A stretch of 64,000 nt of DNA. Source: Macrostomum lignano. Its lineage: Eukaryota. The translations under genes and the position numbers were made by a program. Shown here piece after piece: positions 7,401 through 45,173 of this stretch (its first letter is position 1; every line of letters starts with the position of its first letter). Under the pieces are notes generated by a model. The model did not search any database and was not told the origin of the DNA. It saw only the letters and a program-made list of their open reading frames with translations. The stretch covers positions 1 to 64,000 of the forward strand of contig NIVC01002157.1 of the NCBI GenBank assembly GCA_002269645.1, written 5' to 3'.

Positions 7401-8704
7401 TATCCCTTCCTGATTCTGGCCAACCGCGATAGTAAACATTCCCTATACTGATAAGTTGCAATGACTTTCAAATACTGAGGAAAAGTTCCGAAAAGCGGTG
7501 AAAAGTTTTGCATCAGTGTGGAAAAGTTTCGATTCTTTCCAAAGAATAGTGAGGAAAAGTAGCAAAGAATTTTCGCAAGTTGGAATGCCCCTTTCATTGC
7601 TTCTACACCTAAAGTGCCCACTGTGCACCTTTTGTTCACCTTTTGTGCCTCCAATGCACACTGTACACCTTTTATGCACCTCCACCGCGGCGCACCTTTT
7701 GTTCACCTTTTACTCCACCAATACCCCCAATTCCTACTCTGTTCACCTTTTGTGCCTCCAATGCACACTGTGCACCTTTAATGCACCTAACTCCCCTATG
7801 ACACTTGTGCCCCTACCGCCTATTTCATGCCTTAAATTCACCTTTTGACCCTGCAGAGGCACTGAGGTGAACACGCGGTGCACAGTGGAACAAAATAGGC
7901 ATAAGAGAGGCGAAAGTGAGGCAGAAGGTGCAAAACTCTTCACCTTTTATGCCTACTTTAGAAAATCAAAATCCAACGGGTGAACGTAATACAGACGAAA
8001 CTCAGCCTAGGGAGCAGGCAGGCCTAATATAGCTCAGCCAATGACAGAGCAGTAAGAAGAGAGGTCAAAGTTTGACGGTCGAAACTCAGCCTAGGTGGAC
8101 AGACCCCATCTAGCTCAGCCAATGAGAGAGGAGTAAGGACTCGCTTTAGTATTTTGTTATAAAGTCAGACACAAGCGGGCAAGAGGAAATCCTTAAACTG
8201 TTTTACGGGCCTGGCTGGAGGGCTGGAGCGCCAACCCTTTTCACTCTGCTCTTTATGCACACGCATTGGATTTGGGTGCAGCTGCCAACAGGATGAATAC
8301 TCGTAAGCTAATTGAATGTGTTCGCTTTAAGGACAAAAAGCCTGTGGCGAATCTTGCAACTCAGACACTAAAATATCTATCTATTTTTATTTTAGTATCT
8401 GTGATCACGACAGATCAACTTCAATTTTGACACCCTCTATTTTTTCCAAGCTGGAATTTGACAAACGGCGCCTGGAACCCCGCCGATAAAAAAACAAAAC
8501 TAAGTTTATTTTTTTCTACATTTCAATATTACCTTCCGGAGACTTCTGTTCAGAGCCAGCCAGATCTTCGCCAACTCTACTACACACCGGCATGCTGACT
8601 GGCCTAGACGGTGTGCTGCTCATAAAACTGCGCAGCGATTGGCTGACGCTAGTATGACGCAACAGTACAGAATCCACCACTTTGGACGATACTTCGTGCT
8701 CCAT
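4470..8704 (-). CDS. MAPK8IP1: JNK-interacting protein 1/2 (JIP1/Aplip1)-like scaffold: D-motif, SH3, PTB and C-terminal kinesin-light-chain-binding tail
   Basis: Exons (8704, or further 5' to about 8854-8881)-8533, 6514-5973, 5711-5616, 5449-5258 and 4730-4470, with consistent phases (1,0,0,0). SH3: SHRAAHRFCPRHPDQLALVEGDPIVV...WAAGVNLRTRERGVFP. PTB: NFVGAVEV...YYFSMRNVSLCCVHP...AFVTRHP...AHVF. Tail: YMAFCHPTEDLFIDE* (human YTCPTEDIYLE*). JIP-type D-motif RPVSMPV. The start codon is uncertain. Confidence 0.88.
4898..5078 (-). mobile_element. tRNA-derived SINE copy (3'-truncated) in the last JIP1 intron
   Basis: Reverse complement of the 3972-4243 head and body (GTCTTGCTCAAGGACACA, GAATCGAACCCC, CTCTAACCACTAGGCTACAACCCC). 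Confidence 0.85.
5815..5930. repeat. 20-bp minisatellite in a JIP1 intron
   Basis: About 5-6 copies of GTTAAATGAAATGGCGCCCA. Confidence 0.8.
6799..7285. mobile_element. Foldback/MITE-like element with inverted arms of about 72 bp; related GCACCTTTT/AAAAGGTGCA arrays continue to about 7950
   Basis: 6807-6879 (GGCATAAAAAGTGAACGAGGTGCACAAAAGAGGC...TATTTCGTGCATGTTTTGGAAATGCAC) is the reverse complement of 7205-7277 with few mismatches. Confidence 0.7.
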
Positions 8705-9352
8705 TTCGTCTAAGCAGTGCCGACAAGGTCTGGCATCAGCTAAGCTTGTACAATCGGCCGCCGGGCTCAACTCAGTCAGCTGATAGAATTGGCGCTGACA
8801 TCCGGTACAGGTGCGGATAGTGCCGCTGTGGCCTGACGCCTGCTGCTGCTGCTGCTGCGGGGGCCGTTGTTTAGTATTTTGTTAAATTCAACTTTGACTA
8901 CTGCAAGTAGGCTTACTAGATGATTAGTTCGGGCTGTTCCACCTCTCATACTCCTTCGGCGACATTGACCGCTGAGCACATACAAGAGCGCGGACACGCT
9001 CACACAGGGTGTACAGCGGTCCGGACTTTCTAATTGTCAGGCATGTACACTCTCTGTGTCTTTGGGGTTGGCCCTAATAGGTGTGAATCGAACGTGCGTT
9101 TATAATCTCCAACATATAGAAGCTGATGGGATGGCTGGCAGTGGAAGAAAAATTAATACAACTCAAAAAGGCAATTTTTCATGCAAAAAAGTTTTAGACA
9201 GTCACAATTTTATTACTTTCTTGACAAGGTCTCCGGGAAGTGAGGCAATTTGAATCCAACAAAGTGCGCTAAATATAAAATGCTCCTGTTGCCTACTAAC
9301 AGTAGGATAAAAACACCAATTTAATTAAGCTAAACTATTCCACTTGTAATCT

Positions 9353-10602
9353 TCAGTTTCGCCACAGCTTCAATTCGCGATCCTTCCCTCCGCTGGCCAC
9401 TTTCTGGCCGTCGGGCGACCAATCGACTGCGTAAACTTCGTCAGCGTGGCCGGGCAAATCGTTCACAGGCTTTAAACGATTCTTGCCGCCAGCAGCGCCA
9501 ATGTCCCACAGCTTTAGGGTGCTGTCGGCGCTAGACGATACCAATAGGCGGCTGTCGGCCGACCAGGCCACCTGGTAGACTCGGCCAACATGGCCAAGCA
9601 GGGTGGCCAAGAATTTGCCTGTCCGGCCGTCCCACAATCGGACAGATTTATCAAAACTGGCGCTAGCCAATAAGCGGCCGTCCGGGCTAAATCGGACATC
9701 GTTGACCAGCTGCAGGTGGCCGGTTAGGCGGGCCACGGGCCGCTTGTCGGTCTCCGGGGTCCACAGCGTTAGCGTGAAATCGTCGCTCCCTGATACGAGG
9801 CGTTCCGGCTGGTCGCGTCTGGGATGGGCGGGAGAATGAAGGGTAAAGTACTTGGTTCTTAGCCAATGGGATGGGGAGCATTATATAATGAGATCGGGAG
9901 TATTATCCAATGAGATCGGGAGCATTATCCAATGAGATCGGGAGCATTATCCAATGAGATCGGGAGCATTATCCAATGAGATCGGGAGCATTATCCAATG
10001 AGATCGGGAGCATTATCCAATGAGATCGGGAGTATTATCCAATGAGATCGGGAGCATTATCCAATGAGATCGGGAGCATTATCCAATGAGATCGGGAGCA
10101 TTATCCAATGAGATCGGGGGCATTATATAATCACACTAAGAACCCTAGCAAACTGCATGGAGACTAAACATGATGCTAAGGAAGCCGTAGTCTTCTATTG
10201 TCTAATTGCCTAACCTGGCAGCCTCGTAGACTCGCCGGGCCCGTTCGCACAGCTCAGTTCTTGGCGCGCCAATCTCCGGTGCCGGCTTGCCAGGCTCGTT
10301 AGCACCAAGCCGCATAGCGTAGTCCGTACTGAGCGCCAGAGTGTTCACCCAGTGCGCGTGCTGCTGCAGGGTGCGGCACAGGGCGCCGTCGTCAGCGCGC
10401 CAAACTCGGACTGTCCGATCCCGGCTGCCCGTGTACAGCAGGTCGGTGCCGCCCCAGCGCACCTGTGCAATGGGATGGAGGGTGAGGGTTTTCAAGTATA
10501 TTGCCTGGACCACGATTTTAATTTATTCATTTTTGATAGTGTCTAAAACTTAGGCATTTGAACATTTGCTTATCAATCTGCCTTCCTACTGTCCTGTCTT
10601 AG

Positions 10603-10633
<31 letters not shown>

Positions 10634-12019
10634 GTCTGTCTGTCTGCCTACCTTAGTGTCTGTCTGTCTGTCCGTCTATCCACCTTTCGTATCTATTTAA
10701 AAATTTTTAAAATCAACACAGCCCCTAAGTTACTCACCTGAGTCACGGCCTGCTCGTGTCCGCTAATAACCCGGCTAACCTGTCCAACAATGGTGTCCCA
10801 CAGTATCACAGTGCAATCCTTAGACGCCGATGCCAATAATCTGCACTCAGAATCCAGATGCAGCGGTCGCCAGGCCAAGCTGGTCACCCACTGCGTGTGC
10901 CGAGCCAGCGGCCGGCCAATCTGCTTGCCAGTGTCCGGGCACCACAGGCAAATCTGGCCGCGCTTGCAGGCGCTGGCCAGGCGCCGGCCGTCTGGCGACC
11001 AGGCAATGCACAGCACCCAGTGCTTGTGTCCCCGACACTCGTGCAAAGGCGTCTCGGTTGACAAGTCCCAGAATCTGACGGCGGCGTCACCGGATCCGCT
11101 GGCCAAATTCCGGCTGTCAGGCGAGAATGCGGCCGATAGGACGGCCTCCGAGTGGCCGGGCAGGCTGGAAGTGCAGCGAGTCACCGGGCGGACACGAAAC
11201 AGCGCCTGCGGTTGGTAGACTATGCGGAGCAGGCGCTCGTTGACTCGGCCGCAGTCGACAGCGCCAGCTAGACTGGTGGCCACTTCCGCTTCGTCTACGA
11301 AAAATCTGAGGTAGGGAATATGTAGGGCGCAGTTAGTCGCAGGGTCATATTTAATTTAGGTTATTAATAAGCTTTTATATCCGGCTAAATTTATTTTAGC
11401 GCCGCTGAGCACTTACTTTGGAGCCGCAGGCACTCATTTTGGCACCAAAGGCTCTCATTTTTGGCGCCATAGGCACTCATTTTGGTGCCACAAGTACTCA
11501 TCTTAGCGCCGCAGGCACTCATTTTGGCGCCATAGGCACTAAATTTGGTGTGATAGACACTCAATGTGGCGCCACAAGCACTCATTTTGGCACTAAAGGC
11601 ACTCCTTCTGGCGCCACAGGCACTCATTTTGGCACCAATGGCACTCATTTTGGCGCCACAGGCACTCATTTTGGCACCCTGAAGCAAAAATTCTTGGTTT
11701 TCATTAAGCTGCGCATATTGTAGAGTTATTTTGATCACCGGGGGCGAATAATTTCCCAAAGAATTGACAAGCCCCCCCTTACTAACTCCCTAACGCATTA
11801 CCTAGCAAAGCATACTACTCACTTATAAATAACTTGATCATCATAATCCCCGCTCTGGACTATCAATTGAGCATCGAGTGTCGCCTTTAGATCTGCTACT
11901 GTAGATCCCAGCAGAGCCTGCAGGGGCGGCCCAGCTTCCTCGCCAGTCTCGCTGACAAACTGCACAAGCACGGCGCGATCTTCTCCATTGTCGTCATTGT
12001 CATCAGCTGTGCTGGACAT
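9353..12019 (-). CDS. NLE1: Notchless homolog 1 (NLE1/Rsa4), NLE domain plus WD40 repeats, 60S biogenesis factor; 492 aa
   Basis: Exons 12019-11823, 11305-10738, 10462-10215 and 9818-9353, all GT-AG with phases 2,0,2; 1479 nt in frame. Motifs VLVQFVSETG, IVYQPQALFRVRPVTRCTSSLPGHSEAV, LVSGSDDFTL and GHADEVYAVDWSPDG. Confidence 0.96.
9874..10130. repeat. 22-bp minisatellite in NLE1 intron 3
   Basis: About 11 copies of GAGATCGGGAGCATTATCCAAT. Confidence 0.95.
10598..10680. repeat. (TGTC)n microsatellite with CTTAGTGTC motif in NLE1 intron 2
   Basis: CTTAGTGTCTGTCTGTCTG twice; the same motif family occurs at 33810-33920 and 44000-45945. Confidence 0.8.
11417..11675. repeat. 21-bp minisatellite in NLE1 intron 1
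   Basis: About 12 copies of GGCACTCATTTTGGCGCCACA. The ORFs across it are repeat artefacts. Confidence 0.9.
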
Positions 12020-15000
12020 TGTTGTTGCAAACAGGTTAAATTTTAGGTGCTAGAAGAAATAGCAGATAGGATCTGAAATAAAAAAAAAATTGCTTTTAAT
12101 AATTGAAAGTTTTTATATTGAAAAACATTAATTTTTAGAGTAAGAAAAAGTGGCTAAGTAATGTTTTGGCTTTAGAAAATGTGAAGCAGATACAGTCAGC
12201 TACAAGAGGTTCTGGACATTGAAACTAGGCAAGTTGAAGCTTCAGACCATTCAACACTAACACTGGCATATGTAGAAGCTGTGTATACAATGGGTGCCTC
12301 ATTTTCTCACTCACTTCAATGGAGGCACTAGTCGTGGTGTGCTAGACATAGGTGATGTTTTCATGGGTAACAAAACAGATCTATTAGCTTGATCTAGAAA
12401 CTAAATGCTAATCAACTGTCTGCTGCTTCAATGGCAAGTTTTCACCAATGAAATTGTAGATGGAGTGCTAACAGGCTTTTGACAACTTTTTTTCTCAAAA
12501 ACTGATTAAATTGCAAGTGGTATTGTAAAACCAATAACTATGAGCACAATAGTATACTAGCTTCTGTCCCCCTAAGGTGATTATAATAAAAGTATAAAAT
12601 ATAACTGCTGCAATACCTGCCTGCACTATGACAATACCAATATATACACTATTAAAAACTATTGATTTCTTTGCTAGCAGCAATATCAAGACTATTATTC
12701 ATCCTGGTTACTTGGGAGACCTGGGTCTGGAATATCTTTCCTGTCTTGAAGGTAAAAGAGCAACTATTAGATAATTGAATTTTGATTCTATAAGTCACTA
12801 TCATAGATCATATAAACATGCTAATGGACTTATAAAATTTGATTTGTTTTAATTTGTTAAAAACTGTGAATTTGTTTTGCTAAACATTACCTAATAAAAT
12901 TCTACCTGATTTTTCTATAAAAGTAGCCATACCTATACCATAGCTATCTAAAATAAACAGTAACTTTTTGAGCCTTTTGAGAAATTCAATCTTTAGGACC
13001 CTAGTCTTTTAAGTTTGTGTATGACCAAGGCATAAAGCCTAAGAAAGATTACAGTGCATAAAAAAGCACAAGATAGGAGAAGTCTTAAAGGCTTGGAATT
13101 GGGAAATTGAAGTTATAAAGGCTTAAAATAGGGCAATAGAAGCCATAAAGGATTATAATAGGTGTAAGAAATTAGGCAAATACTGTTAGGCATAAGGAAA
13201 TAAGAATACAAAAACTTATAATAAAGGTATTGATAAGATAGAGGCTTATTGCTAGACACCCTTGATCCTAGAAAAAGCCATTACTTTTAGGATACACTAG
13301 TGCTTTAAGCCTTCCTAAAGGCATTTAAATTTGAAAATTCAAACATTAAAAGCATGAAAAAAGTTTTTTAATTTTTGACCTAATTCCAAATTGATTTTTG
13401 CATTTTTCAAAATTTTATATATATTTGATTACTCACCACTGAAAAGTTGCCACTCTATGCACTAGTGAGCAATGTCTCTTGTATTATTCTAAAGTAAAAG
13501 ATACAAAAAAACTGATTGGGTGGCTTTAATCCATCTAACAAAACCCTTACACATTGCATCCTCCCACTTTATTCCTTAACTCGAAAGCTTACCGCAGTGT
13601 AGCAAGTGTTGTCATTGCAAAGATAGAGAGACTACTTTCAAAAGAGACAGATGGAATATTCTATGATAGCAAATTTTTGATGTTGCTAAATATATATAAG
13701 AACACTATGACACTAAGCCCTCAATGATAAGTATTCAAATTAAAAGTTCTAATATTGAAGGCATTAAAAACTTGTTTTCAAATATTTGACGCACTTACAA
13801 TTGGTATAAATTTGATATACAAATTTTCCAAATGATTTTGAAATAATTAGGCCTATTAGCTATTGCCTCTACGGGCTCTACCTACAACTGCACTACCCAG
13901 TATTGTGTATTCATAAAATAAGACAAACAAGATCAGAGAATTTTAGGGGGTTGATAAATTGTAGGCTACCTTTTTACCCCCCCCCTTATATACACCCACA
14001 CTTTTATTAATTGTCTATTAGACTGATTATTAAACAATAATAAAATTAAACCAACCCTACCATTTGTAAGCCTATTACGCTACACAAAGGGTCATAAAAC
14101 TCCTTTAGCTTTATTCCTAATATAAATCCTACATTAGGGCCTATACATTGGCTAAGGTCAGAGAAGCCTAAATGGTTGCACTGAACAATTAAATTTAAAA
14201 ACAATGCACCCATAAAAAGCATTGAAAATCATTTTTTTATTTGATCTACTTTCTATTCAAAGCTATTTCCTATTTAATGTGCTATTTCTTTGATAGACTA
14301 ATAGACAAATAGCGCAAAATTATTATATAGATCTATTGGCATATTTGGTCTGCTTGAATCCTAAAAAAGTTGTATTTAGCAATGCAAAGGCATCTAAAAA
14401 AGTAGTATAAAATGCACTTTGAAAAAAAGGTGCAAGTAATATTTTAGTTTCTATAATAAAAGGTAGGCCTAGCTAGAACATTTTAAAGGAAAAGGTAAGC
14501 AGTTGAGAGGTGATGGGAATATTTAAACAAATAAATAATAATAGTAATTAAACTTGTTAATCCTTTTATAGAATTTAGACAGATCAACTAGAACTTTATA
14601 TTAATATATAATTGCAAGTTTTTATAAATAAGAAAAAGACATAACACTTTTTTTGTTATAATGTGCATATAGAATATCAAACATAAGAATGGAACAAGTT
14701 TTTTATTGTTGCAAAACGCAATGCAAAAGTAAACTTAGTAAAGTTGTATATTTTGAAATTTTGGTATATTTGACCTAAACAAAGTCACATTTCTAATTTT
14801 TGGTATACTTGGCATATAAACTATGGGCTCATGACAGGGCTCTAGTTACAATTAGGCCCTGCCCCAACCTTTGATTTTTTATTTTAAACATTAAAAATAC
14901 TTGAGCTGATGAATAAGCAATGAGGACCATATTACTAGCTTAGTTTTTTAAAAGATAAATTAGGAGTTGTAGGGATTCTAGTTTTGTGCAACAATTAATT

Positions 15001-16382
15001 AATTGCATATTTTAGCTAGAAGATTAGGAGGATCATTAAATTTAAAAGTAATAATAGGCCTATGCCAATGGAAATGCAAGCAATACTTATTATTATCACA
15101 GTTGCTAGGCCTAATAATAAATGAATAGACCAACTTGAAATACTTTTAAATAATTCGTCTTCCATTCAATACTGACAATAGGCATAGCCAAAATGGCATA
15201 GTAGGTAAAAATAAGGTAAGTAGGGTAAGTAGGTGACTGTAGGTCTACTGGAAAATTTTCAATTCATGCCAACCAATACTTAAACTTGAAGTGTAGACAA
15301 AACTTCTATATTAACATCACGTGTTACTAGGCCTACGCACTAAACTTTCCTTTACTCTTCTTGCTTCTTGAGTGATTGCAAAATACTTAACAATAAATTT
15401 ATCTCAAATGCATCAATGAATTAACATTGCTAGGTTGATTAATTGTAATTAATTAATTGTAATAGGTCCTAGTCACATCTTATAGGCCCACCATATGGCC
15501 CGCTTTAATTTAGTTATCAAGTTTTAATTTTTTCTTAGAAAACTTTTACACAAAAACAAATTACAATATGCAACAGACAACAGGAATGTATTGTGTTCCG
15601 GCCTTTTGCTTGTTAAATATGTGAATGAGATTCATATGCATAATATTTGAGGTAGCTATAAAATGTAAATTCGGAACAATCAGTGCTCATCATCACTCGT
15701 CGGTCAGCAGCAGCATGTAGAAGTGTAGAACTTGTTGTATGATGTTGTATTGTCGTTTAGCATAGCCAATTAGCCATAAGGGCTGAGGGTTTAAATAAAT
15801 TATCGAAGCTTTAAATTAAAAAAACTAGGCCACTATGAGTTACTATAGTTAATTAGGCCTAGGGCTACTGTAACTTTCTAAAGTTCTTAATGTTCTTAAC
15901 CTTCAAAATAAAGTAAAGCACTATTTCGAACTATAAAATGGTTGTAGGCCTATAGTACAGAGTCACAGACGCAGAAGTAGCAAGTAGGCTAGGGGCTACA
16001 CTAGTGCAGTGCCTAAGTCAACTTAGTTTAATTAATCATTATGTTTACTTTAGTGACAATCAATCTGGTGACTGTCATTTTAAGCCTAGGGCCTAGTGCT
16101 AATGTGGTGCAATATGAGTATGTGTAGGCCTATTATTATTTTGTTTTTATTTACACTAGATAGGCAGTATCCAATTAATCAGGCAATAAAAGGATATAGC
16201 AATATATGATCTAGTGCATACATGCCCAACCTAAAAATTTCACCCATCCGATGCAACTTAGTTTTGTCCAGATTTGTGACTTACCTATATATCACCACAC
16301 TGAAAGACTGGGAGAGGGGGTAAGTTTCTGGATGTGCCCAGACTGTCCAGACAGAAAGTTATTGAGAATAAAACAGTTTAGT

Positions 16383-17644
16383 TATGAGGGCTAAGCAATA
16401 AGTTTTTAGATATGCATTGTTGAGAGGCAGCTGACAAAATCTGACACCATAGGTATCAAGTGCATTAGGCCCTATATAAGTAAAATGTTTGTAAAGTTTC
16501 AGACACACTGGTCATATATATTCAGTGTAGCACCCAAACCAAGCTAGTATACCCACCGTATCTATCAAATTCACAATGGAGCTCAATATAAGTCATTTTA
16601 GAGCAATGATTTATTACTATTTTAAAAGTGGTTTGCAGCAGCAAGAAAGTCTTAAGCACTTGCAAGGAGCTTTTGGGTATGAAGCACCATCTAGATCCAC
16701 CATTTTTGACTAGTTTGTCAAATTTCAATGTGGTAGATAGAGTCTGGATAATAAAGAGCATAGCGGCTGGCCTGTCTCCTCAATGACCAAGGATAGGCCT
16801 AATATTGCTGCTATCTGGGCCATGGTTGAGGATAGGCCTAATGTCCAAGTGACTATGGTCCAGATAGAAGCAGAAGTGGGCATCTTATCAGAATCTATCA
16901 GGACAATCCTGCATTCACAGCCCAACCTAAGCAAGATTTCTGCATGCTAGGTGCCTTATCAACAGACTCTGAAGCAAAAAGAGGCTCAGGTGACCTAGTG
17001 CCACACCATGCTCGACAGATTCAATGGAGGTAGCTCAAACTCAGTCTGGGATATTGTCAATGGTGACAAGTTCTAGATCTATAGTTTTGACCCAGTGACT
17101 AAGCAGCAGTTGGCCTAGTTGGTTGGCCAGTTGGTGGCACCCCACCATCTAAGCTTCAGCAAGAGCGCAGCATGGCAAAGCAGATGATGGCCATTTTTGT
17201 GGTAAAAACTGGTTATCTGGCCACAGTTCCACTCGTGCAGCAATGCAAAGTCACTAGTAACTAGTACACTAACGTTTGCTTACTAGAAGTGCTAAGTGCT
17301 CTTTCCAGGCATTGCCCAAGGACTCAAGCTTGGGGCATCCTTCTCCATTATAACAATGCCCTAGCCTACAAGGCTCAACTGATGGTAGAGTTCCTGGCCA
17401 GAGAGTGCATTCAAGAGCTTGGTCATCCACCCTACAGCCCTGACCTGGCCCTTTGCAACTTTTTTGTGTTTCTACAAATCAAGCGCAAGATGTGTAGGAT
17501 CCACTATAAAAAGCTGCAGTGGAGGCTTTTATCTGGCATGTGGAAGAGGTGCCTGCTTATAATTGGTCCAGCTGCTTCAGTATATGGTTTGAATGCATGA
17601 AAATTTGCATCAAATCTGCTGAAGAATACTTTGAAAAGATGTAA
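16383..17644 (+). mobile_element. Mariner (Tc1/mariner DD34D-type) transposon relic; transposase pseudogene at 16576-17644
   Basis: MELNISHFRAMIYY..FGYEAPSRSTIFD*F; KISAC*VP (WVP motif); VWDIVNGDKF*IYSFDP (GDESWIY); ILLHYNNALAYK (HHDNAPAH); HPPYSPDLALCNFF (YSPDLAPxD); terminal EYFEK-like end. TIR-like left end TATGAGGGCTAAGCAATAAGTT at about 16383; no right TIR found. Confidence 0.92.
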
Positions 17645-17867
17645 CTGTGCATGCAAGAGCAAAAACGATGCTATTTACAGGGCATTACAATAGATAAAGA
17701 ATGTGTGATGACAGGAAGTTGAGTTAGACTTACAAGTTTGCTAAAACCATGGGCAAAAAAACAATTTCTTTCAATACCATTGTGCTGCACACAAATTGGA
17801 GCCTTCTATATATTATGCCTTCTAAAATTTGCCATTTATACAATGCCTAGATGACAGCCAAAAAATC

Positions 17868-18090
17868 TCCCAATTGCAACTTAGTTCTTCCCAATTGCAA
17901 TTTAGTTCCTCCCAATTGCAACTTAGTTCTTCCTGATTATGACTTAGTTCCTCTTGATTGCAACTTAGTTCCTCCTGATTGCAACTTAGTTCCTCCAAAT
18001 TGCAACTTAGTTCCTCCGAATTGCGACTTAGTTCCTCCCAATTGCAACTTATTTCCTCTTGATTGCAACTTAGTTCTCCTGATTGCAACA
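17868..18090. repeat. 21-bp minisatellite
   Basis: About 10 copies of TTGCAACTTAGTTCCTCCCAA. Confidence 0.9.
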
Positions 18091-18759
18091 TAATTTTCAC
18101 TTTATATATGACTTTTCTTGCCTTTTTCTTTTTTCTTTTCTTTCTTTTTCTCTTTTCTTTCCCCTCTCTTCTCCCTCCTTTCTTTTCCTTTTCTCTTCCT
18201 CTTTTCTTCTCCCAATTTTTTTGTTTTTGTATTTTTAATTTTGCGACTTACCTTGACTAGCAGCCATTTTACCCATCTAGTTTGGATAGGTTGGACAGGT
18301 GTTAGGCATGTATGATCCAGTGACAATCAATTTAGCAATAGTCAATCTAGCAATAAGATATAATACAAGGTAAATAAGCTATTAAATTAACAATTTAGGC
18401 TTAGTATTTATACAGATTATTAAGGCTATACTAGGCCTTGTTATTATGTTTATTGATATTAAATTTTGCAAGTGTTTATCTACTATGCAGAATTTGTTAA
18501 ATAATAAAAGTCGCAACTATATTGCATTCTCCTTTGTATTTTTAGTATAGCAAATACATGAAAATTGCAATGCAATTACTATTTTTTGGTTCTTTGATTC
18601 TCAAATATTGTTAAAAGTAAAAAGAATCTTAATGATTAGGGCCTAATTGCCTTAAAGCTTTATATTTGTATAGTTTATATACAACAACAAATATAAATAA
18701 CTAAAATAGGTCTAATTTATAAGTAATATACATGTCGTAGGGGTTTGCTTCCCTCTTTT

Positions 18760-19430
18760 AGCTATTCCACTAATGCCACCAAGTTGTAATAGGCTAAAGC
18801 TTCTCTCTATTAAAAAATCCTACTAAGGTCACCAAAGTTGTAACAGGGCTTAACTTCTATTTTTATAAATGTTGGTAGCTGCCACAAAGACTATTCTATT
18901 AATAAATTATAAGTTTATTATTTTTATAATAAGTCTGAGAAATGTTTCTTATAATTAGTCTAAGTATATATCTGAGTAGTTGTCTAAGTATTATTCTTAG
19001 TATTATTCTTGGTATACAAGTTGTGTTCTACTGTTATTATGATAGCATTCTACTATTATTCTGGCCTGAGCAGTGTATTGGTTTATTGGTAGATATTCTG
19101 CATGTACATTTTGAATTGCATGTACTTTTAGTCCTGGATTTTACAGAGATCAGAGGGTCACAGCCTCTAGTTATTCTTGCATGTATCAATTTAGGATCTA
19201 CTTCATATTCTCCTACTACTTAACATTTCTGCCTCTCAGTAGTAGTATATTCAGTATATGCTTTAGTCTATTTCACTTTGCTTTGCAAATAATTAACTTG
19301 GAAAACAATCTTCAATAACATTTACTTGGTACTCTTACTATTTGATACTGGCCTACTTTCTTAAGGAACCGCAATGCGCAAGGTAGGTCTCTCCTTTGCC
19401 AAAAATGCTTCTATTTATACTAAATTTAAT
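18760..19430 (-). mobile_element. Inverted paralog of the 880-1560 LTR-like repeat
   Basis: Contains GATCAGAGGGTCACAGCCTC, TATTCTGGCCTGAG, GTTGGTAGCTGCCAC and CTATTTATAC, colinear with 880-1560 in reverse. Confidence 0.6.
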
Positions 19431-20848
19431 GCTAGTTTAAACAAAAATTAATTTGCATAAAATATTATGAACATACATGCGCAACCCCCCTGATTTACAC
19501 TGGCCATGCGACTTACTTTTTAACAAAAAATGCGACTTACCTGCAAAAGAAACCTTAACGCAATTTTGGGTAAACGGCAGGAGTAACTATGACTGTCTTA
19601 TTAGGCTAAATGCCTCGTCATCTAATTAGTACTCCATCTGTATTCTTCAGGCTGGGCAGTTTTGCGACTTACCCCTGTTCCACCACAATTTACGGTGGCC
19701 AGATCGGCCAGGTCGGCCAGCAGTTGCGCATGTATGCTTATGAAAAATATGTGTATTATAACAAATGTGTTTTCTTAGATTTGGCACGCATGCAAAATGA
19801 GTTATACAATTATCAATTTTGTCCCACAATGTTGAAAAATAAGTTCCCTAATAGTTCATAGCCACTGATAAAGATCATAAACTTGCTTTAATTGAAAAGA
19901 TAAACATTTCATATAATTTGGTTAGCCTAGGTGTATTTAATATGATGGGTCCACACTTTTATGTAATATCTAGCTTTATAGCTAAAACAACCTAAATGTT
20001 AATCAGGGCTTAATACAAATATTTAACTAGTTAGGCTATCTCATTGTATATTAACCAATGATAGCTAGAAATGAAAATTGCATATATTATTTACTTCATG
20101 TGCATTTACTGCATGTCATAGCATTATCAATTCTTATAGTATACATAAAGGAAACAACATTTTTTTTCTTAATCAGATTTACAAAGTATTAATAACACCT
20201 AATTTTACTAATATTCTTAAATATTAGTAAATAATGTCCAATATCCAAATATCCAATTATCTTTTTGAAAGACTTTATCTTAAAAGTTTTTATTTACTTT
20301 TTCAATTCTTTTGCTAATTTATAATCATAGAATAGAACAGCTATAACTACTAAGCTAATCAATAATATTTTATTCTATTTCATTTTTTATAGATAATATT
20401 TAGTAATCCTAGGCTTAATTATGTATATTTGTCCTATTTCATTAAAATCTATCTAGGCAATATTATAGTTATATTATATAGAAAATTAGCAATGACTATC
20501 TAAATTTAAATTAACAACAAAATTTTGGAATCAATTATAACTTCACTTTAACTTTAATTATAACTTTAACTTGTTCATTTGCCAACAAACAAAAAAACTA
20601 AAAATCACTATGTATCAACTAAAAAGTAAAGTCACATAGTAAAGATCAAATAAAACATATTAAAACAAAAAAACAGCTATTTAAAATTTTAATATCAAGC
20701 TTCTTATATATGCCATGGCCAATATGGCAATATAATACTATAGACAATATAATAATAGTATATTTGGCAATTATATGCCCACCTAAGTTAGACAAAAAAT
20801 TTCTATACCTAGCCTATTTTAAGGCTTAAGATAGGCCTATCTGGCTTC

Positions 20849-21028
20849 AAGTGGCGCAATCAAGGGGAGGGGTGGCAGTTGCCCCTCTTAGGCAAACACC
20901 AAAAAAAAATCGAAGGGGAGACAAAGCAAATTTTTGCCTAAAACAGAGCCACTTCTCCACCTCCCTTCCCAGGTCTTTATCCTTTAGAATCTACCCTCCT
21001 CCTTAAAAAATTTCTGGTTGCACTACTA
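20849..21028. mobile_element. 180-bp hAT-type MITE with 8-bp TSD
   Basis: TSD CTGGCTTC at 20841-20848 and 21029-21036. Imperfect TIRs AAGTGGCGCAATCAAG and CTGGTTGCACTACTA. Confidence 0.75.
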
Positions 21029-21507
21029 CTGGCTTCTAGTCAATCTAGAGACAAGACAATCTAGCATTAGAAAACCCGGCAAGAGTCAGATTGGCAACAG
21101 ATGATCTGGCAATAGATTTTTTGTAGATTTTATAGATTTTAGGACTGTATCTAATGTTTTCTACATGTATATAACATTTCTATTCTAATCTAAGATATGT
21201 CAATCCTAAACTCCTAATGTAAGTTACTATAATAAACAAATTTTATCTTCTAAGCTAAAATTTTCTAGCTATTTATTATATAATACAAATATGTATGTAC
21301 AGGGCCCCTCCCGATTCTTTTACAAAATTTAAGCAATAATCTCTTGAATACACCTGCCATTCCATTGCTGCTGTCGTCTTAATTCTTTTGACAAGGTGTT
21401 GAAAAAATTGGTTTTAAAGAAAAAACCAATTGAATAAAAAACAATCGTTTAAATTAATACAAAGTTTTTTATCCAATCAGTGCCATAAAAGCTGCCCCCA
21501 ACGACAC

Positions 21508-22683
21508 ATGGAGTTTCATGTTACTTGCGGCAGGCACAAAAAGCTGGTATCTGTCAACTGTCTTAACAGCTTAGAATCGGCCATCTGCAGTCGTTTCCAT
21601 GTTCGCCAGCCGCTGCTGTTGCAGCGCTGGCATGACGCCTACGCTGACTGGCTTGATGTCGAATTTCCAATAGCTGATGATAATGAGCTGCAGGCTAATA
21701 CACGATTATTGGCTATACCACTGACACCTCCGCCGTCAACTTCTGCTGCTTCTGCCGCTACCTCATTTGTTGTTAGCACCAACAATCATAACAGTAATGA
21801 GGCTTTAATAGAATGCGATGACTCGTTGCCTAGCGATACTGCTTTATCTTCCTGTCTGCCGCAGCAGCAGCAGAAGGCTTCGCCGCCTCCGCCATTGTCA
21901 GTGTCGCTTTCATTGCCATTGTCTCTGCTGCCGCCGCCGCCACCGCCTCCGCAGCAGGTGACGGTGTCAACGCCAACGCCGACTCAATCGCCAACGCCAT
22001 CCGTTGACTGTTCAGCACCGGCCTCGGCCGACCAGCCTAGCAACTGGCCATCTCCATTCGTCATTCCCGTTGACCGGTTCGACCCGTCATTATCGGCCGC
22101 CGTGTTTAACGCTGGCGGAGGCGGGGCGCTTAGCCGGGACGAATTGACCCGCCTGTTGGATATTCTGTTCCAGCAGATTCGCCAGTACACCTTCTATCCA
22201 AAGACCAGTCAGTACGCCGAGGTGGCCGAAGCTCTTCTGTCGCTTTATCCTCAACTGGACGAAGGCCTGCCACCAGAGGACGCCTTGTCGCTTTGGAAGA
22301 ATCGACTGAGTCAAAAATTTCGCAACTGTCGCAAACGCGGTGTTGGTTTCACCGACGAGGAAAAGGCTCGATTCTATGCCCGAAGGCCTCCAACCGCCGC
22401 CTCCTCAGTCGCATCGTCTAGTGGCAATTTAAAGCGAATTAAACTCGCTAAAAGCTCTTTCACAGCAGCAGCAGCGGCAGCAGCAATTTCTATTGAACCG
22501 TCGCCATCGTCAGAAGAAGTTGACGATTACGATGGTCGCTGCGTTCTTAATTATCCGACTAATTGCACAGCAGGTGGCGCCCAGGGCGCTAAAATTGGCG
22601 GAAGCGAGGACAATAATGTGGCATTCGGATCGGAGTTTAGAAATTCTGAATTGCTGAACGGTATCGGAGCGTTTGGTCTGTGA
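21508..22683 (+). CDS. Single-exon uncharacterised protein: N-terminal PB1/ubiquitin-like region, Pro-rich linker and SAMD3-like (BEN-like) helical domain; possibly transposon-derived
   Basis: First ATG of the 21430-22683 ORF is at 21508 (MEFHVTCGRHKKLVSV...LLLQRWHDAYADWLDV). The segment WPSPFVIP...LLDILFQQIRQYTFYPKTSQYAEVAEALLSLYPQL...WKNRLSQKFRNCRK fits the pattern seen in SAMD3-like proteins. GC-rich and stop-free for 391 codons. Confidence 0.65.
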   Translation: MEFHVTCGRHKKLVSVNCLNSLESAICSRFHVRQPLLLQRWHDAYADWLDVEFPIADDNELQANTRLLAIPLTPPPSTSAASAATSFVVSTNNHNSNEALIECDDSLPSDTALSSCLPQQQQKASPPPPLSVSLSLPLSLLPPPPPPPQQVTVSTPTPTQSPTPSVDCSAPASADQPSNWPSPFVIPVDRFDPSLSAAVFNAGGGGALSRDELTRLLDILFQQIRQYTFYPKTSQYAEVAEALLSLYPQLDEGLPPEDALSLWKNRLSQKFRNCRKRGVGFTDEEKARFYARRPPTAASSVASSSGNLKRIKLAKSSFTAAAAAAAISIEPSPSSEEVDDYDGRCVLNYPTNCTAGGAQGAKIGGSEDNNVAFGSEFRNSELLNGIGAFGL

Positions 22684-23106
22684 GACTGCTAGCGAGCGAG
22701 TTAATTATCAGCGAGTTTATTACCTGACCCGCAGCCATGAGCTGGATTTTCTATTTGGCCCTTGAGGTAAAGTTTGCTGACCCCTGGCCGTAGTACAAGT
22801 GGGGAATAAATGCCATACAAGTACTTAATTAGGTAACTATGGCTCAATATATTCTGATTGTCATTTATTTGTCTAATCCACAGATAATAGAATAGCCAGA
22901 TGTGCCACTTGCGAAAATGTACCCATCTAATGTAATCTTTTTTATTACAGTTTTTGAAGCTGCAAAAATCTCTGGCTTTCTACAAGCTAGCTCATTAAAT
23001 TAGCATCTTCATTCTGTTTTACCGACTCAAGACGGAAAAAGGGGTGGCGCCCCAGTCCCCAGCAGAGCCGATGAACAGTTGAGCTTCCTCTTGCACGCTT
23101 GTGTCT

Positions 23107-23450
23107 GAATTTGACCTCTTCTCCTTACTGCTCTCTCATTGGCTGGGCTAGATTAGGCCTGCCCCCTAGGCTGAGTTTCGTCCGTCTAACTTCGACCTCT
23201 TCTCCTTACTGTTCTCTCATTGGCTGGGCCAGCCCCCTAGGCTGAGTTTCGTCCGTCTAACTTCGACCTCTTCTCCTTACTGTTCTCTCATTGGCTGGGC
23301 CAGCCCCCTAGGCTAAGTTTCGTCCGTCTAACTTCGACCTCTTCTCCTTACTGCTCTTTCATTGGCTGGGACTGCCCCCTAGGCTAAGTTTCGTCCCTCT
23401 AACTTCGACCTCCTCTCCTTACTGCTCTCTCATTGGCTGAGCTAAATTTG
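23107..23450 (-). repeat. CCAAT-containing tandem repeat of about 55-60 bp; inverted paralog at 7995-8140
   Basis: About 5 copies of TTCGACCTCTTCTCCTTACTGCTCTCTCATTGGCTGGG...CCTAGGCTGAGTTTCGTC; 7995-8140 carries two reverse-complement units. Confidence 0.8.
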
Positions 23451-25112
23451 GCCTGCCTAACCGTTTCATAAGTCATTTAATTCTGGGTTTCTTTAAGCTA
23501 AGCGTCAGAATCGCTGCCATTCGGTAATTTTAGTTCAAATTAAGCCATTTTTTCTGAAATCTATCGCATACCCACAAACAACTCATTTTTAGTATATGAA
23601 GATTTAGTATATTTAGATTTTCAGAAGCCGTCTGGCAACAAGCCAAAAAAGTTTAAAATCGACTAAAATGTCGACATCCATACCCTGCCCTACCCTTTAC
23701 ACTGCTGAGTCCCTCTAACCCACAGAAATTGCAGAAGTCTGCAGACTCCCATATTTACAGATTACTAGAATTTGATAATTGATACAAGACTTAAAATCCT
23801 AACAATATTTAATAGTTATAAAATTATTGATACTGCGAATGAAATATGAACTAAAAATAGGGAACTTAAATTAAATAGCATCCACGTTTCCTAACAGGGT
23901 GTCAAAATGGAAATTGATGTGTTCTGATAGACACTAGCTGTGACACTAAACGGCCTATTTCCTCCTTATGGGAATTATAACAAGTTTATTATTTTTACTA
24001 TAAAATGAAAGTTTCTAAATAAAACATTTCTCTGTTTAGTTATGTTTGCGCGAGTATTTTACTTTTGTCGTTCAGGTCCACTGTGTGTCAATTAATAACT
24101 TCGTATAATTGTTATCCTATTGTAACGCAACGTCATTATTATTTAGTATTGTTTATTATTATACTTGGACTTATGTATACTATTTGTTTTTTTCTTAGCA
24201 AATCTTGTCATTTTTGTCTAAGTCTCATTTTTTCATTCGAGTCGAGTATTTTAAAATGAATTTTTGTGTGTTTATTCGAATTTATAGAATTATATCAATT
24301 TATAACTGTATTTTTCCTTTCTCGCTACTTGTGCCGCGCTTGTATAGTAGTCAATATAGCACATTACCCGGAATTTCTTTTGGCCATTTGGCGCTATATC
24401 TGAGCACTACTCTGTTAGTGCTTAATGAACACTTTTTTCTTTTCTATATTGCATTTTCTGTTGTTGAACGCGTCTCAGTGTAGTCTTTGTTCGATTCTTT
24501 TCTGTTAGGCCTTCAATAAAAGTACAATATCTAATAATCATTTCTTGGTAGCCAATTTGTTCACTTATACAAGTCGCTATTGCGTACGAGTACCAATAAG
24601 GTAAATGCCGCTGTCTTGCTAAGTTAAACGTCTGTCCGATCTAGTATAACTGTGCTGTAGGCCTATTGTGCATTTTCTAATTTGTTTTCACCTTTTCTGT
24701 CACTGTTTAACTGCCTGTATTAGACTTTTTGCATACTGGTAAAGCGTGGAATATATTATAATAACAATGTGGTGCAAGGTCCCATTGTCAGTCAATGGTA
24801 AGGGCAATCAGATTCGGTATGGACTTGCAATATCGGGTTGGGCTTTTCAATGATCAGTATTCATTATTATACAATAATTGCTAATGTATCTACGTGCAAC
24901 CTCTGATGCTTATTAGTGTCGCAATCTCTTTCTATTGTCAACTTTTTCTCTTCTGTTTATTGGCTGTGCAATTTTTCTATGCGGGATTGCAGCCTGTTGT
25001 TAGACTTGTTTTAAGTCCATATATTGCGTTTCTTATACTCTTGTCTAACAAGACTTATCAAAGTAAATTTGCATATGGCTGGGATAAAATGCTAGTCTAT
25101 CATTTTTACATG

Positions 25113-26133
25113 CATGACCATAGTGGCAACAGTAGTCCATGGCTCCTTATGACCATAGCGGCAACAGTAGTCCATGGCTCCTTATGACCATAGTGTCAAC
25201 AGTAGTCCATGGATCCTTATGACCATAGTGTCAACAGTAGTCCATGGCTCCTTATGACCATAGTGTCAACAGTAGTCCATGGCTCCTTATGACCATAGTA
25301 GCAACAGTAGTCCATGGCTCCTTATGACCATAGTGGCAACAGTAGTCCATGGCTCCTTATGACCATAGTGGCAACAGTAGTCCATGGCTCCTTATGACCA
25401 TAGTGGCAACAGTAGTCCATGGCTCCTTATGACCATAGTGGCAACAGTAGTCCATGGATCCTTATGACCATAGCGGCAACAGTAGTCCATGGCTCCTTAT
25501 GACCATAGTGTCAACAGTAGTCCATGGATCCTTATGACCATAGTGTCAACAGTAGTCCATGGCTCCTTATGACCATAGTGTCAACAGTATTCCATGGCTC
25601 CTTATGACCATAGTAGCAACAGTAGTCCATGGCTCCTTATGACCATAGTGGCAACAGTAGTCCATGGCTCCTTATGACCATAGTGGCAACAGTAGTCCAT
25701 GGCTCCTTATGACCATAGTGGCAACAGTAGTCCATGGCTCCTTATGACCATAGTGGCAACAGTAGTCCATGGATCCTTATGACCATAGTGTCAACAGTAG
25801 TCCATGGCTCCTTATGACCATAGTGACAACAGTAGTCCATGGCTCCTTATGACCATAGTGGCAACAGTAGTCCATGGCTCCTTATGACCATAGTGTCAAC
25901 AGTAGTCCATGGCTCCTTATGACCATAGTGTCAACAGTAGTCCATGGCTCCTTATGACCATAGTGACAACAGTAGTCCATGGCTCCTTATGACCATAGTG
26001 GCAACAGTAGTCCATGGCTCCTTATGACCATAGCGGCAACAGTAGTCCATGGCTCCTTATGACCATAGTGACAACAGTAGTCCATGGCTCCTTATGACCA
26101 TAGTGGCAACAGTAGTCCATGACTCCTTATGAC
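25113..26133. repeat. 35-bp minisatellite
   Basis: About 29 copies of GACCATAGTGGCAACAGTAGTCCATGGCTCCTTAT. Confidence 0.97.
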
Positions 26134-44196: not shown

Positions 44197-44245
<49 letters not shown>

Positions 44246-44266
44246 TAGACAGACAGACAGACACTA

Positions 44267-44319
<53 letters not shown>

Positions 44320-45120: not shown

Positions 45121-45173
<53 letters not shown>

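What the first reader, a model, noticed from the sequence alone, without database searches (positions are those of the whole stretch)
16383..17644. RIP-like C>T/G>A hypermutation (CpA/TpG and CpG) of a mariner transposon in an animal genome
Seen: the transposase is nearly colinear with few indels. Five positions where mariner transposases normally have Trp read TAG (FD*F, AC*VP, VT*C, KF*IY, N*YT). His reads Tyr (CAT/CAC>TAT/TAC: VPY, GY, HYNN, AYK), Pro reads CTA (CLLEV, NALAY, FLQI), and Arg reads TGC/CAC/CAG/TGT. The TIR-like end reads TATGAGGG, where mariners often start TACGAGGG. Established: TGG>TAG, CAY>TAY and CCA>CTA are CpA/TpG transitions, the hallmark of fungal repeat-induced point mutation (Neurospora RID pathway), which is not described in animals; CpG transitions follow 5mC deamination. 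Inference: a repeat-targeted CpG plus CpA methylation/deamination system destroyed this element in place. Ancestral codons are inferred from family knowledge, not from an alignment.
Basis: partly seen in the sequence, partly recalled or inferred. Interest (0 to 1): 0.85.

Follow-up and report, generated by a model that had tools for sequence, protein, structure and literature searches.

The report
Methylation-type C-to-T decay of mariner
A dead mariner transposon, in what is almost certainly the flatworm Macrostomum lignano, was ruined almost entirely by C-to-T changes at CpG and CpA (mainly CAG) sites; this mutation pattern is confined to some repeats and fits targeted DNA methylation followed by deamination better than a fungal-style RIP system.

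Summary
Against a consensus built from about 40 genomic copies (intact 353-aa DD34D transposase), the window copy carries 135 C>T/G>A changes, 7 T>C/A>G and 17 transversions. Per-site C>T rates in 12 hypermutated lineages are CpG .36, CpA .11 (CAG .16), CpT .06, CpC .035 and T>C .009.

The pattern is restricted to repeats. In a 36-kb comparison with the homeologous contig, the mariner, its host repeat and an unrelated old repeat show CpG about .8 and CpA about .22. Adjacent unique DNA shows no CpA bias (.064/.081/.066). Fifteen other copies of the same mariner, equally old by transversions, lack the pattern and sit in CpG-rich flanks (Spearman -0.79).

C>T and G>A changes are interleaved along the sequence. 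RIP composition indices are negative. The genome encodes DNMT1, DNMT2 and DNMT3 types, and I found no RID-like or APOBEC-like gene.

Best reading: germline CpG methylation of selected repeats, with DNMT3-type CAG side activity, followed by deamination. RIP proper is not supported. The assembly statistics match M. lignano Mlig_3_7, whose methylome pattern is undescribed. Two local hyperdivergent blocks remain unexplained.

The parts
16383..17648 (+). 3'-truncated mariner copy. TA target duplication at 16383-16384; 5' TIR from 16385 (TGAGGGCTAAGCAATAAGTTTTTAGATATGC; consensus CGAGGGCTGAGCAATAAGTTTCTGGATGTGC); 3' TIR absent.
   Evidence: The alignment to about 40 genomic copies and the consensus show homology ending after GATGTAACTGT. 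Other copies carry TA duplications.
16576..17644 (+). Transposase pseudogene (the consensus encodes 353 aa, DD34D). It has 7 premature TAG stops: 5 from TGG and 2 from CAG.
   Evidence: Codon-by-codon comparison with the consensus. Pfam HTH_48, DDE_3 and Transposase_1 on the consensus protein. Nearest database relatives are 80% identical mariner/SETMAR-like transposases.
16217..16322 (.). Short piece of a high-copy host repeat immediately upstream of the mariner.
   Evidence: Matches of 86-91% on dozens of contigs, several of them next to other mariner copies.
17675..18320 (.). High-copy host repeat abutting the truncated 3' end. It contains a 21-bp minisatellite (TTGCGACTTAGTTCCTCCCGA)n, is CpG-depleted (o/e .16) and is hypermutated like the mariner.
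   Evidence: At least 1263 first-look candidates, including places beside other mariner copies. Consensus of 21 copies. Homeolog comparison: CpA .228 and CpG 7/9.
16217..19471 (.). Domain of excess transitions between the window and its homeolog C2600: Ts 6.3-9.3% with Ts/Tv 3.3-6.8, against Ts/Tv 1-2 elsewhere over 36 kb.
   Evidence: Per-kb landscape and context table. Fisher test, repeats against unique DNA: CpA OR 4.0, p 5e-10.
13290..14260 (.). Unrelated old repeat family showing the same signature; serves as a replicate.
   Evidence: 594 first-look candidates at 70-75% identity. Homeolog comparison: CpA 20/95 against CpT .107 and CpC .109. Against a 21-copy consensus: CpG .46, CAG .225, CAH .145, CpT .122, CpC .093, T>C .026.
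14883..16216 (.). Unique intergenic DNA, present only in the near-identical contigs and the one homeolog. Used as the local neutral control; it shows no CpA bias.
   Evidence: for copy number. pooled over 11800-13289 and 14261-16216 (which contains this stretch): CpG 5/39, CpA 23/359, CpT 30/372, CpC 10/152, Ts/Tv 1.3.
16861..18592 (.). Hyperdivergent block between the window and the otherwise identical contig C2359: 77 substitutions, 70 of them transitions. Unexplained.
   Evidence: A second case occurs at another locus, L008/L022.

Best explanation
The window holds an old, 3'-truncated mariner copy embedded in a high-copy host repeat. The insertion predates the split of two subgenomes.

The copy, its host repeat and other repeats nearby lie in DNA that the germline has kept cytosine-methylated. 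Methylation is heavy at CpG (maintained by DNMT1, set by DNMT3). It is lower at non-CpG sites, following the flank preference typical of DNMT3 enzymes: CpA, especially CAG. Spontaneous deamination of 5-methylcytosine to thymine on either strand then produced an accelerated, one-directional C>T/G>A decay. T:G mismatches outside CpG are probably repaired less well than those within CpG.

This decay created the TAG stops from TGG (CCA on the other strand) and from CAG, the Tyr from His, the Leu from Pro and the Cys/His/Gln/Trp from CGN Arg codons. Copies of the same family that landed in unmethylated, CpG-rich DNA decayed with the ordinary balanced spectrum.

Shown here: the mutation spectrum, its restriction to repeats and to particular copies, and the presence of the DNMT genes. 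Inferred, not shown: that these repeats are methylated, that the CpA component comes from DNMT3, and that deamination is spontaneous rather than enzymatic.
For: (1) Spectrum. In 12 hypermutated lineages against the consensus, C>T per site is CpG .36, CpA .109, CpT .058 and CpC .035; T>C is .009 and transversions about .01. Counting sites hit at least once: CpG .97, CAG .78, CAH .50, CpT .41, CpC .31.

(2) The repeat-specific non-CpG motif is CAG. CAG .164 against CAH .082 in the mariner. .37 against .19 in non-mariner repeats, but .077 against .061 in unique DNA. .225 against .145 in a second family. CAG and CAC are the known non-CG targets of mammalian DNMT3B and DNMT3A (PMC7736785, PMC5595995).

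(3) Restriction to repeats. Homeolog comparison gives CpG 19/23 and CpA .218 in repeats. Adjacent unique DNA gives CpG .128, CpA .064, CpT .081 and CpC .066, with similar transversion levels (.014 against .018).

(4) Copy specificity. Fifteen 'young-looking' lineages all have broken ORFs and as many transversions as the hypermutated ones (about 10 against about 13), yet 12-19 C>T changes against 53-89. C>T load correlates with CpG depletion of the 3-kb flanks (rho -0.79, p 2e-9).

(5) C>T and G>A changes are randomly interleaved in every lineage, as expected for slow damage to both strands of duplex DNA.

(6) The CpA and CpG loads rise together across copies. From those fractions I calculate by hand a ratio of log-survival terms of about .05-.11.

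(7) Exons of DNMT1 type (PDB E 4e-64) and DNMT3 type (E 4.5e-19), plus DNMT2, are present in the genome. The literature says M. lignano keeps DNMT1 and DNMT3 and has low 5mC (PMC11292947, PMC9246332, PMC10658182).
Against: - No methylation data were available, so methylation of these repeats, at CpG or at CAG, is inferred only from mutation footprints.
- The CpA excess is about 10% of the CpG excess. This is high compared with typical animal non-CG methylation levels and needs either substantial CAG methylation in the germline or poor repair.
- The -1 pyrimidine preference differs from the mammalian TACAG motif. It also occurs in unique DNA, so it is probably background.
- Two allelic pairs carry 4-6% transition-only blocks inside otherwise identical sequence. 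A constant slow process does not predict this.
- The repeat-against-unique control comes from one 36-kb locus plus two further families.
- The lineage counts involve some pseudo-replication.
Confidence: 0.6

Rival explanations
1. A true RIP-like defence: a homology- or small-RNA-guided enzymatic C-to-T mutagenesis that hits repeated DNA in bursts in the germline, using a DNMT-like or unknown deaminase activity.
For: C>T/G>A makes up 85% of changes. CpA is preferred over CpT and CpC, and only in repeats. C>T load is decoupled from transversion 'age'. Two loci have transition-only 4-6% blocks coinciding with the mariner and adjacent repeat inside otherwise identical subgenome copies. Derived C>T alleles are split between the two copies, as independent hits would give.
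Against: CpG, not CpA, dominates. The substrate RIP index (CpA+TpG)/(ApC+GpT) is 1.73 and TpA/ApT is .90, equal to the window background of .93. Fifteen lineages of >95% identical 1.3-kb copies escaped. The old repeat is still hit although its copies are only 70-75% alike. Load follows regional CpG depletion. There are no strand-coherent runs. All PF00145 hits are DNMT1, DNMT2 or DNMT3 types, so no RID/Masc1-like gene was found. Eight of ten allelic pairs show no block.
Confidence: 0.1
2. AID/APOBEC-type cytidine deaminase editing of single-stranded transposon DNA. TGG>TAG is also the classic APOBEC3G footprint.
For: TGG>TAG 26 times against TGA 0 times in 12 lineages. The 5' pyrimidine preference gives CCA .156 and TCA .123 against ACA .081 and GCA .066.
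Against: C>T and G>A are equal in number and randomly interleaved in all 14 copies tested. CpG is the main target. The -1 pyrimidine effect is also present in unique DNA. The non-transposing host repeat and an unrelated repeat are hit in place after the subgenome split. No APOBEC_N or NAD1 match was found in the genome; this is a weak negative because the search works exon by exon and had no positive control.
Confidence: 0.04
3. Ordinary neutral decay: the genome-wide AT-biased mutation spectrum acting for longer on an old copy, with no targeting.
For: Intergenic DNA is 30-33% GC. C>T exceeds T>C even at CpC.035 against .009. The -1 pyrimidine effect is genome-wide.
Against: Adjacent unique DNA of the same age shows no CpA or CAG excess and only about 2-fold CpG elevation. 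Copies of the same family with equal transversion counts lack the signature. Ts/Tv is 3.3-6.8 in the repeat domain against 1-2 elsewhere.
Confidence: 0.08
4. Methylation-independent heterochromatin effect (weaker uracil or mismatch repair, late replication) for the non-CpG part, with the hyperdivergent blocks caused by assembly or polishing chimerism or ectopic gene conversion in repeats.
For: The assembly is Canu on PacBio CLR reads, polished with Pilon using short reads; 36% of its length lies in chimeric scaffolds (PMC5730564, PMC10733133). The blocks coincide with repeat DNA. Of the 37 'private' derived alleles, 11 are shared with the homeolog, which I judge (no formal test) to be more than parallel hits would give.
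Against: Chimerism or conversion from less-mutated copies can only dilute, not create, an excess of derived T/A alleles relative to the family consensus. Transversions are not elevated in the repeat domain. The CAG specificity points to an enzyme preference rather than a general repair deficit.
Confidence: 0.15

Closest known systems
5-methylcytosine deamination decay of methylated transposons (vertebrate CpG decay; plant CG/CHG/CHH-methylated TEs)
   Same: One-directional C>T/G>A on both strands. CpG is nearly exhausted (59 of 122 CpG cytosines changed, CpG o/e .12) while CpA/TpG are enriched. The effect is confined to methylation-prone repeats. DNMT1 and DNMT3 are present.
   Different: In most invertebrates methylation sits on gene bodies, not TEs. 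Here genic DNA shows no CpG hypermutability (CpG .030 against .021-.025; exon CpG o/e .93), and only a subset of repeats is affected. A sizeable CpA/CAG mutational footprint is not, to my knowledge, described for an animal germline.
Repeat-induced point mutation (Neurospora crassa RID/DIM-2 pathway) and RIP-like processes of other fungi
   Same: C:G>T:A transitions restricted to repeated DNA. CpA is preferred over CpT and CpC. Stop codons are created and copies permanently inactivated.
   Different: CpG is the dominant target. CpA/TpG are not depleted. Near-identical copies escape. Targeting follows the neighbourhood rather than homology. No RID-like gene was found. No premeiotic single-cycle signature is visible.
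DNMT3-dependent non-CG methylation (mCAG in mammalian embryonic stem cells via DNMT3B; mCAC in neurons via DNMT3A)
   Same: The hierarchy CpG >> CpA > CpT > CpC and the CAG preference of the repeat-specific component (PMC7736785, PMC5595995).
   Different: Known from methylomes of particular mammalian cell types, not as an evolutionary mutation footprint in TEs. The upstream flank preference differs. Methylation itself was not measured here.
APOBEC3G hypermutation of retroviral cDNA (GG>AG, TGG>TAG stops)
   Same: Trp codons turned into TAG, never TGA. Preference for a C preceded by C.
   Different: No strand coordination. This is a DNA transposon and non-mobile repeats mutated in place. CpG dominates. 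No APOBEC-like gene was detected.

Membership tests
mariner (Tc1/mariner superfamily, DD34D) | TA target-site duplication and about 30-bp terminal inverted repeats | tested here: met
   In the family, TA flanks the element and the ends are inverted: CGAGGGCTGAGCAATAAGTTTCTGGATGTGC ... GCTCAGCCCTCG. The window copy keeps only the 5' TA and TIR.
mariner (Tc1/mariner superfamily, DD34D) | Transposase with an N-terminal Mos1-type HTH and a DDE/D catalytic domain, with 34 residues between the second and third Asp | tested here: met
   Consensus ORF of 353 aa. Pfam HTH_48 (E 4.9e-11), DDE_3 and Transposase_1. HHD-N...C-D spacing is 34 residues, counted on the translation. Relatives are annotated Mos1/SETMAR-like. 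The window copy itself is a pseudogene.
Repeat-induced point mutation (RIP) | C:G>T:A transitions confined to duplicated DNA | tested here: met
   85% of changes are C>T-type. The excess is present in three repeat families and absent from adjacent unique DNA.
Repeat-induced point mutation (RIP) | CpA as the dominant target, giving CpA/TpG depletion and TpA gain (TpA/ApT >= .89 and (CpA+TpG)/(ApC+GpT) <= 1.03) | tested here: not met
   CpG is the dominant target (.36 against CpA .11). The indices are .90 (equal to the window background of .93) and 1.73.
Repeat-induced point mutation (RIP) | All sufficiently long and similar copies are hit (homology-dependent) | tested here: not met
   Fifteen lineages of 1.3-kb copies, 2-3% from the consensus, carry a balanced spectrum. 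Load tracks flank CpG depletion.
Repeat-induced point mutation (RIP) | RID/Masc1-type cytosine methyltransferase homologue | tested here: not met
   The PF00145 search of the whole assembly scored all 15 candidates. The 12 matches fall into DNMT1-, DNMT2- and DNMT3-type genes. The six-frame, exon-wise search could miss a divergent gene.
Repeat-induced point mutation (RIP) | Acts premeiotically within one sexual cycle | not testable with these tools
   Needs crosses or pedigrees.
Methylation-driven (5mC deamination) decay | Maintenance and de novo C5-methyltransferases present | tested here: met
   DNMT1-type exon (E 4e-64 to PDB DNMT1) and DNMT3-type exon (E 4.5e-19 to DNMT3A). Agrees with the literature on M. 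lignano.
Methylation-driven (5mC deamination) decay | CpG>TpG/CpA on both strands far above other transitions, regionally coherent | tested here: met
   97% of CpG cytosines were hit in at least one lineage. C>T and G>A are balanced and interleaved. Flank CpG o/e correlates with load.
Methylation-driven (5mC deamination) decay | The affected sequences are actually methylated in the germline, at CpG and at CAG | not testable with these tools
   No methylome data could be reached. Reviews state that the methylation pattern in free-living flatworms is unknown (PMC9246332).
AID/APOBEC editing | Strand-coordinated clusters of C>T or G>A | tested here: not met
   Runs tests in 14 copies: observed runs equal or exceed expectation for all sites.
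AID/APOBEC editing | AID/APOBEC-like deaminase gene in the genome | tested here: inconclusive
   No hit for PF08210 or PF18778. There was no positive control, and other deaminase clades were not searched.

The most novel reading that the evidence does not exclude
The flatworm germline has a RIP analogue. It would be an active, targeted C-to-T mutagenesis of selected repeats (CpG plus CAG), acting in bursts. Such bursts could make two otherwise identical subgenome copies differ by 4-6% transitions exactly over a mariner and its neighbouring repeat, as seen at 16861-18592 and at the L008/L022 locus. This would be the first such genome defence described in an animal.
Probability: 0.1. Interest if true: 0.9.

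Novelty: new variant of a known kind. Interest (0 to 1): 0.5.

Why it matters
Macrostomum lignano is one of the few flatworms that kept DNMT1 and DNMT3. It is reported to have only low 5mC, and reviews say the genomic pattern of methylation in free-living flatworms is unknown.

The mutation footprints found here make a sharp, cheap-to-test prediction: methylation in this animal is aimed at a subset of repeats rather than at gene bodies, and it includes a CAG/CpA component strong enough to leave an evolutionary scar. If confirmed, this would be an unusual methylome for an invertebrate, closer to the fungal or plant arrangement. It would also be an example of methylation acting as an irreversible mutagenic TE inactivator in an animal.

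There are practical consequences too. TE age estimates based on Kimura distance in this genome will be badly wrong for methylated copies. Divergence between the subgenomes will be overestimated in repeats.

Tried and rejected
(1) The first MAFFT alignment without strand adjustment gave a nonsense consensus because loci are stored in contig orientation. It was redone with --adjustdirection.

Fitch parsimony on the ML tree inflated 'T>C' reversals because CpG and CpA hot spots are homoplastic. I therefore relied on direct comparison of independent lineages with the consensus and on counts of sites hit at least once.

(3) Polarising flank mutations by majority among triplicate loci was swamped by minisatellite misalignment and by unbalanced trees. 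I dropped it in favour of the filtered homeolog comparison.

(4) The LINE at 36.6-40.3 kb was tried as a control family, but its copies are about 100% identical and so uninformative.

(5) The host repeat proved a poor context control. It is a 21-bp minisatellite plus a CT-rich tract, and nearly all its CpA sites are GCAA. It gave CpG .34, CAH .033 and CAG 4/18. This agrees with the extended motif but carries little weight.

Smaller requests worked.

(7) Exact-sequence look-up of the neuropeptide-like ORF and a literature search for its peptide gave nothing.

(8) The paper reporting M. lignano methylation (Wasik et al. 2015) is not held.

(9) Considered and rejected: that the CpA excess comes from ancestral CpG sites hidden in the consensus. 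That would produce paired A>G changes, which are rare (0-6 per copy).
Full report
WHAT IS THERE

Window 16383-17648 is a copy of a mariner transposon. It starts with the TA target duplication and a 5' inverted repeat (TA|TGAGGGCTAAGCAATAAGTTTTTAGATATGC). It runs through a transposase reading frame (ATG 16576, TAA 17642-17644). It stops being homologous to its family a few bases later, so the last ~60 bp and the 3' inverted repeat are missing.

A DNA search of the window's own assembly found at least 43 places. I aligned 40 of them. Their majority consensus is 1312 bp, 53% GC, has 62 CpGs and encodes an uninterrupted 353-aa protein. That protein has Pfam HTH_48, DDE_3 and Transposase_1 domains and DD34D spacing. 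Its nearest database relatives are 80% identical mariner/SETMAR-like transposases.

Two more stops are CAG>TAG. There are four His>Tyr, five Pro>Leu and about 24 Arg CGN>TGN/CAN changes. The first TIR bases are TACG>TATG.

In total the copy differs from the consensus by 135 C>T/G>A changes, 7 T>C/A>G and 17 transversions. By the 3' neighbour of the mutated C, the rates are CpG 59/122, CpA 42/206, CpT 21/177 and CpC 13/164.

THE FAMILY SPLITS INTO TWO KINDS OF COPY

Twelve independent lineages are hypermutated. The tree is star-like with long terminal branches. Pooled C>T per site is CpG .36, CpA .109, CpT .058 and CpC .035. T>C is .009 and transversions are about .01.

Fifteen other lineages are 2-3% from the consensus with a balanced spectrum: CpG .055, CpA .015, CpT .008, CpC .026, T>C .020. 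These are not active copies. All have broken ORFs and roughly neutral codon-position patterns. They carry about as many transversions as the hypermutated class (7-14 against 6-23).

So the C>T load is decoupled from age. It correlates instead with the CpG depletion of the 3 kb flanking each copy (Spearman -0.79, p 2e-9). Most hypermutated copies are embedded in one and the same high-copy host repeat.

EXTENDED CONTEXT

The hottest non-CpG motif is YCAG. Rates are CAG .164 against CAH .082, CTG .063, CTH .055 and CCH .033. At position -1 the rates are C .158, T .122, A .080 and G .067.

Counting only whether a site was hit at least once, which is robust to shared ancestry, gives CpG .97, CAG .78, CAH .50, CpT .41 and CpC .31.

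Trp codons became TAG 26 times and TGA never in the 12 lineages.

C>T and G>A are equal in number and randomly interleaved in every copy (runs tests).

LOCAL NEUTRAL CONTROL

The window region exists as near-identical contigs (C2359, and C4063 overlapping the first 16 kb) and as one 86-97% identical homeolog, C2600, which shares the mariner insertion and its truncation.

Over 36 kb aligned to C2600, transitions and transversions are about equal everywhere (Ts/Tv 1-2) except at 16-19.5 kb. That stretch holds the mariner plus host repeat and has Ts 6.3-9.3%, Tv 1.4-2.6% and Ts/Tv 3.3-6.8.

C/T differences per C site:
- Repeat domain: CpG 19/23, CpA .218, CpT .122, CpC .107.
- Unrelated old repeat at 13290-14260: CpA .21, CpT .107, CpC .109.
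- Adjacent unique intergenic DNA: CpG .128, CpA .064, CpT .081, CpC .066.
- Genic remainder: .030, .022, .025, .021.

Fisher tests, repeats against unique DNA: CpA OR 4.0 (p 5e-10), CpG p 2e-7, CpT p .07, CpC p .2.

The CAG effect is seen in the mariner (.38 against .154) and in the other repeats (.37 against .19), but not in unique DNA (.077 against .061). The -1 pyrimidine effect occurs in unique DNA too and is therefore background.

A second family (21 copies of the 13.3-14.3 kb repeat, polarised by its own consensus) reproduces the order: CpG .46, CAG .225, CAH .145, CTG .158, CTH .112, CpC .093, T>C .026.

The signature is real and associated with repeats.

WHY IT IS NOT RIP

- CpG, not CpA, is the main target. 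With saturation corrected, the CpA excess is about one tenth of the CpG excess.
- CpA and TpG are enriched rather than depleted. (CpA+TpG)/(ApC+GpT) is 1.73 and TpA/ApT is .90, against .93 for the whole window.
- Near-identical 1.3-kb copies escaped, while a family whose copies are only 70-75% alike is still being hit.
- Targeting follows the neighbourhood.
- There are no strand-coherent tracts.
- A profile search for C5-methyltransferases across the assembly found only DNMT1-, DNMT2- and DNMT3-type genes. PDB best hits were DNMT1 at E 4e-64 and DNMT3A at E 4.5e-19.
- APOBEC_N and NAD1 profiles found nothing. This is a weak negative.

MOST LIKELY MECHANISM

Selected repeats are kept methylated in the germline, heavily at CpG. 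Non-CpG sites are methylated at a lower level, with the CpA>CpT>CpC and CAG preference known for DNMT3 enzymes (PMC7736785, PMC5595995). 5mC deaminates to T on either strand. T:G mismatches outside CpG may be repaired less efficiently; this point rests on my own knowledge and is an inference.

The CpG/transversion rate ratio implied (roughly 60-130 fold) is within a few-fold of the mammalian figure as I recall it, so no burst is required.

What is shown: the spectrum, its restriction to repeats and copies, and the enzymes' genes. What is inferred: the methylation itself, DNMT3 as the source of the CAG component, and spontaneous rather than enzymatic deamination.

ORGANISM (INFERENCE)

The assembly has 764,410,778 bp in 5269 contigs. 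Mlig_3_7 of the flatworm Macrostomum lignano DV1 has 764,424,962 bp in 5270 scaffolds including a separately added mitochondrial genome (PMC5730564). It is later described as 5,269 scaffolds holding three subgenomes, S, L1 and L2 (PMC10733133).

The triplicated contigs seen here and best Notchless hits at only about 45% identity to lophotrochozoans fit this identification. Reviews state that M. lignano retains DNMT1 and DNMT3 with low 5mC, and that the methylation pattern of free-living flatworms is unknown.

UNEXPLAINED

The window and C2359 are identical over the unique flanks but differ at 77 positions (70 transitions) in 16861-18592. Polarised by the family consensus, 37 of 45 differences inside the mariner are C>T-type derived alleles, split 21:16 between the two copies. 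Eleven of them are shared with the homeolog.

A second locus (L008/L022) shows the same thing, while eight other pairs do not.

Possible causes: homogenisation of the flanks that stalls at diverged repeat DNA, ectopic conversion, consensus or polishing chimerism in a Canu CLR + Pilon assembly, or genuine recent bursts. The last keeps a small probability alive for a RIP-like process.

Chimerism or conversion could inflate the post-split differences in repeats. It cannot create the excess of derived T/A alleles relative to the consensus, nor the contrast between the two classes of copies.

VERDICT

The RIP label is not. This is best filed as a new variant of methylation-driven transposon decay, in an animal where the methylome is undescribed. 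The CAG component and TE-restricted targeting appear to me unusual for an invertebrate.

Noticed in passing
window 16861-18592; also loci L008/L022 (mariner plus about 600 bp to its right): Blocks of 4-6% divergence, almost all transitions, between subgenome copies that are otherwise identical over more than 1 kb on both sides. The blocks coincide with the mariner and the adjacent repeat.
   Followed up: partly
window 36629-40283 (- strand): Non-LTR retrotransposon with endonuclease, reverse transcriptase and RNase H domains. At least 1171 first-look candidates in the assembly, and all 40 scored are about 100% identical, so it is very young or active. CpG o/e is .72.
   Followed up: partly
window 55405-56094 (- strand): 229-aa ORF with a signal peptide, an acidic spacer and about 17 tandem FTPLRG units flanked by KR/KK. 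It looks like a neuropeptide precursor that would yield FTPLR-amide. No exact record and no literature hit.
   Followed up: partly
window 16466, 16794, 16833; L003 and L032 at other positions; L020: Insertions of TAGGCC(C) beside a TA, three times in this one mariner copy and also in other copies at different sites. L020 carries TACGCTCG instead. They resemble Tc1/mariner excision footprints (TA + end bases + TA).
   Followed up: no
window 1-11800 and 21000-36500 against C2600: Genic DNA shows no CpG hypermutability between homeologs (CpG .030 against .021-.025 for other C), and exon CpG o/e is .93. There is no sign here of the germline gene-body methylation typical of invertebrates.
   Followed up: partly
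window 17867-18100 and loci L057-L076: The host repeat contains a 21-bp minisatellite (TTGCGACTTAGTTCCTCCCGA)n followed by a CT-rich tract and a CpG-rich tail. Similar minisatellites fill the flanks of the DNMT exons (loci L041-L050).
   Followed up: partly
window about 44150-46000: A long (GACA)n microsatellite accounts for the AT skew of .81 in that bin.
   Followed up: no
window 1-16312 against contig C4063:45731-62035: Contig C4063 ends inside the repeat just upstream of the mariner and overlaps the first 16 kb of the window's contig at about 100% identity. This is an assembly break at the repeat, or a third subgenome copy.
   Followed up: no
window 9353-11283 (- strand) and 58852-59469 (+ strand): Exons of a Notchless (NLE1) WD40 homologue. 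Also a ubiquitin-conjugating-domain ORF that I judged UBE2O-like by eye, without running a search.
   Followed up: partly
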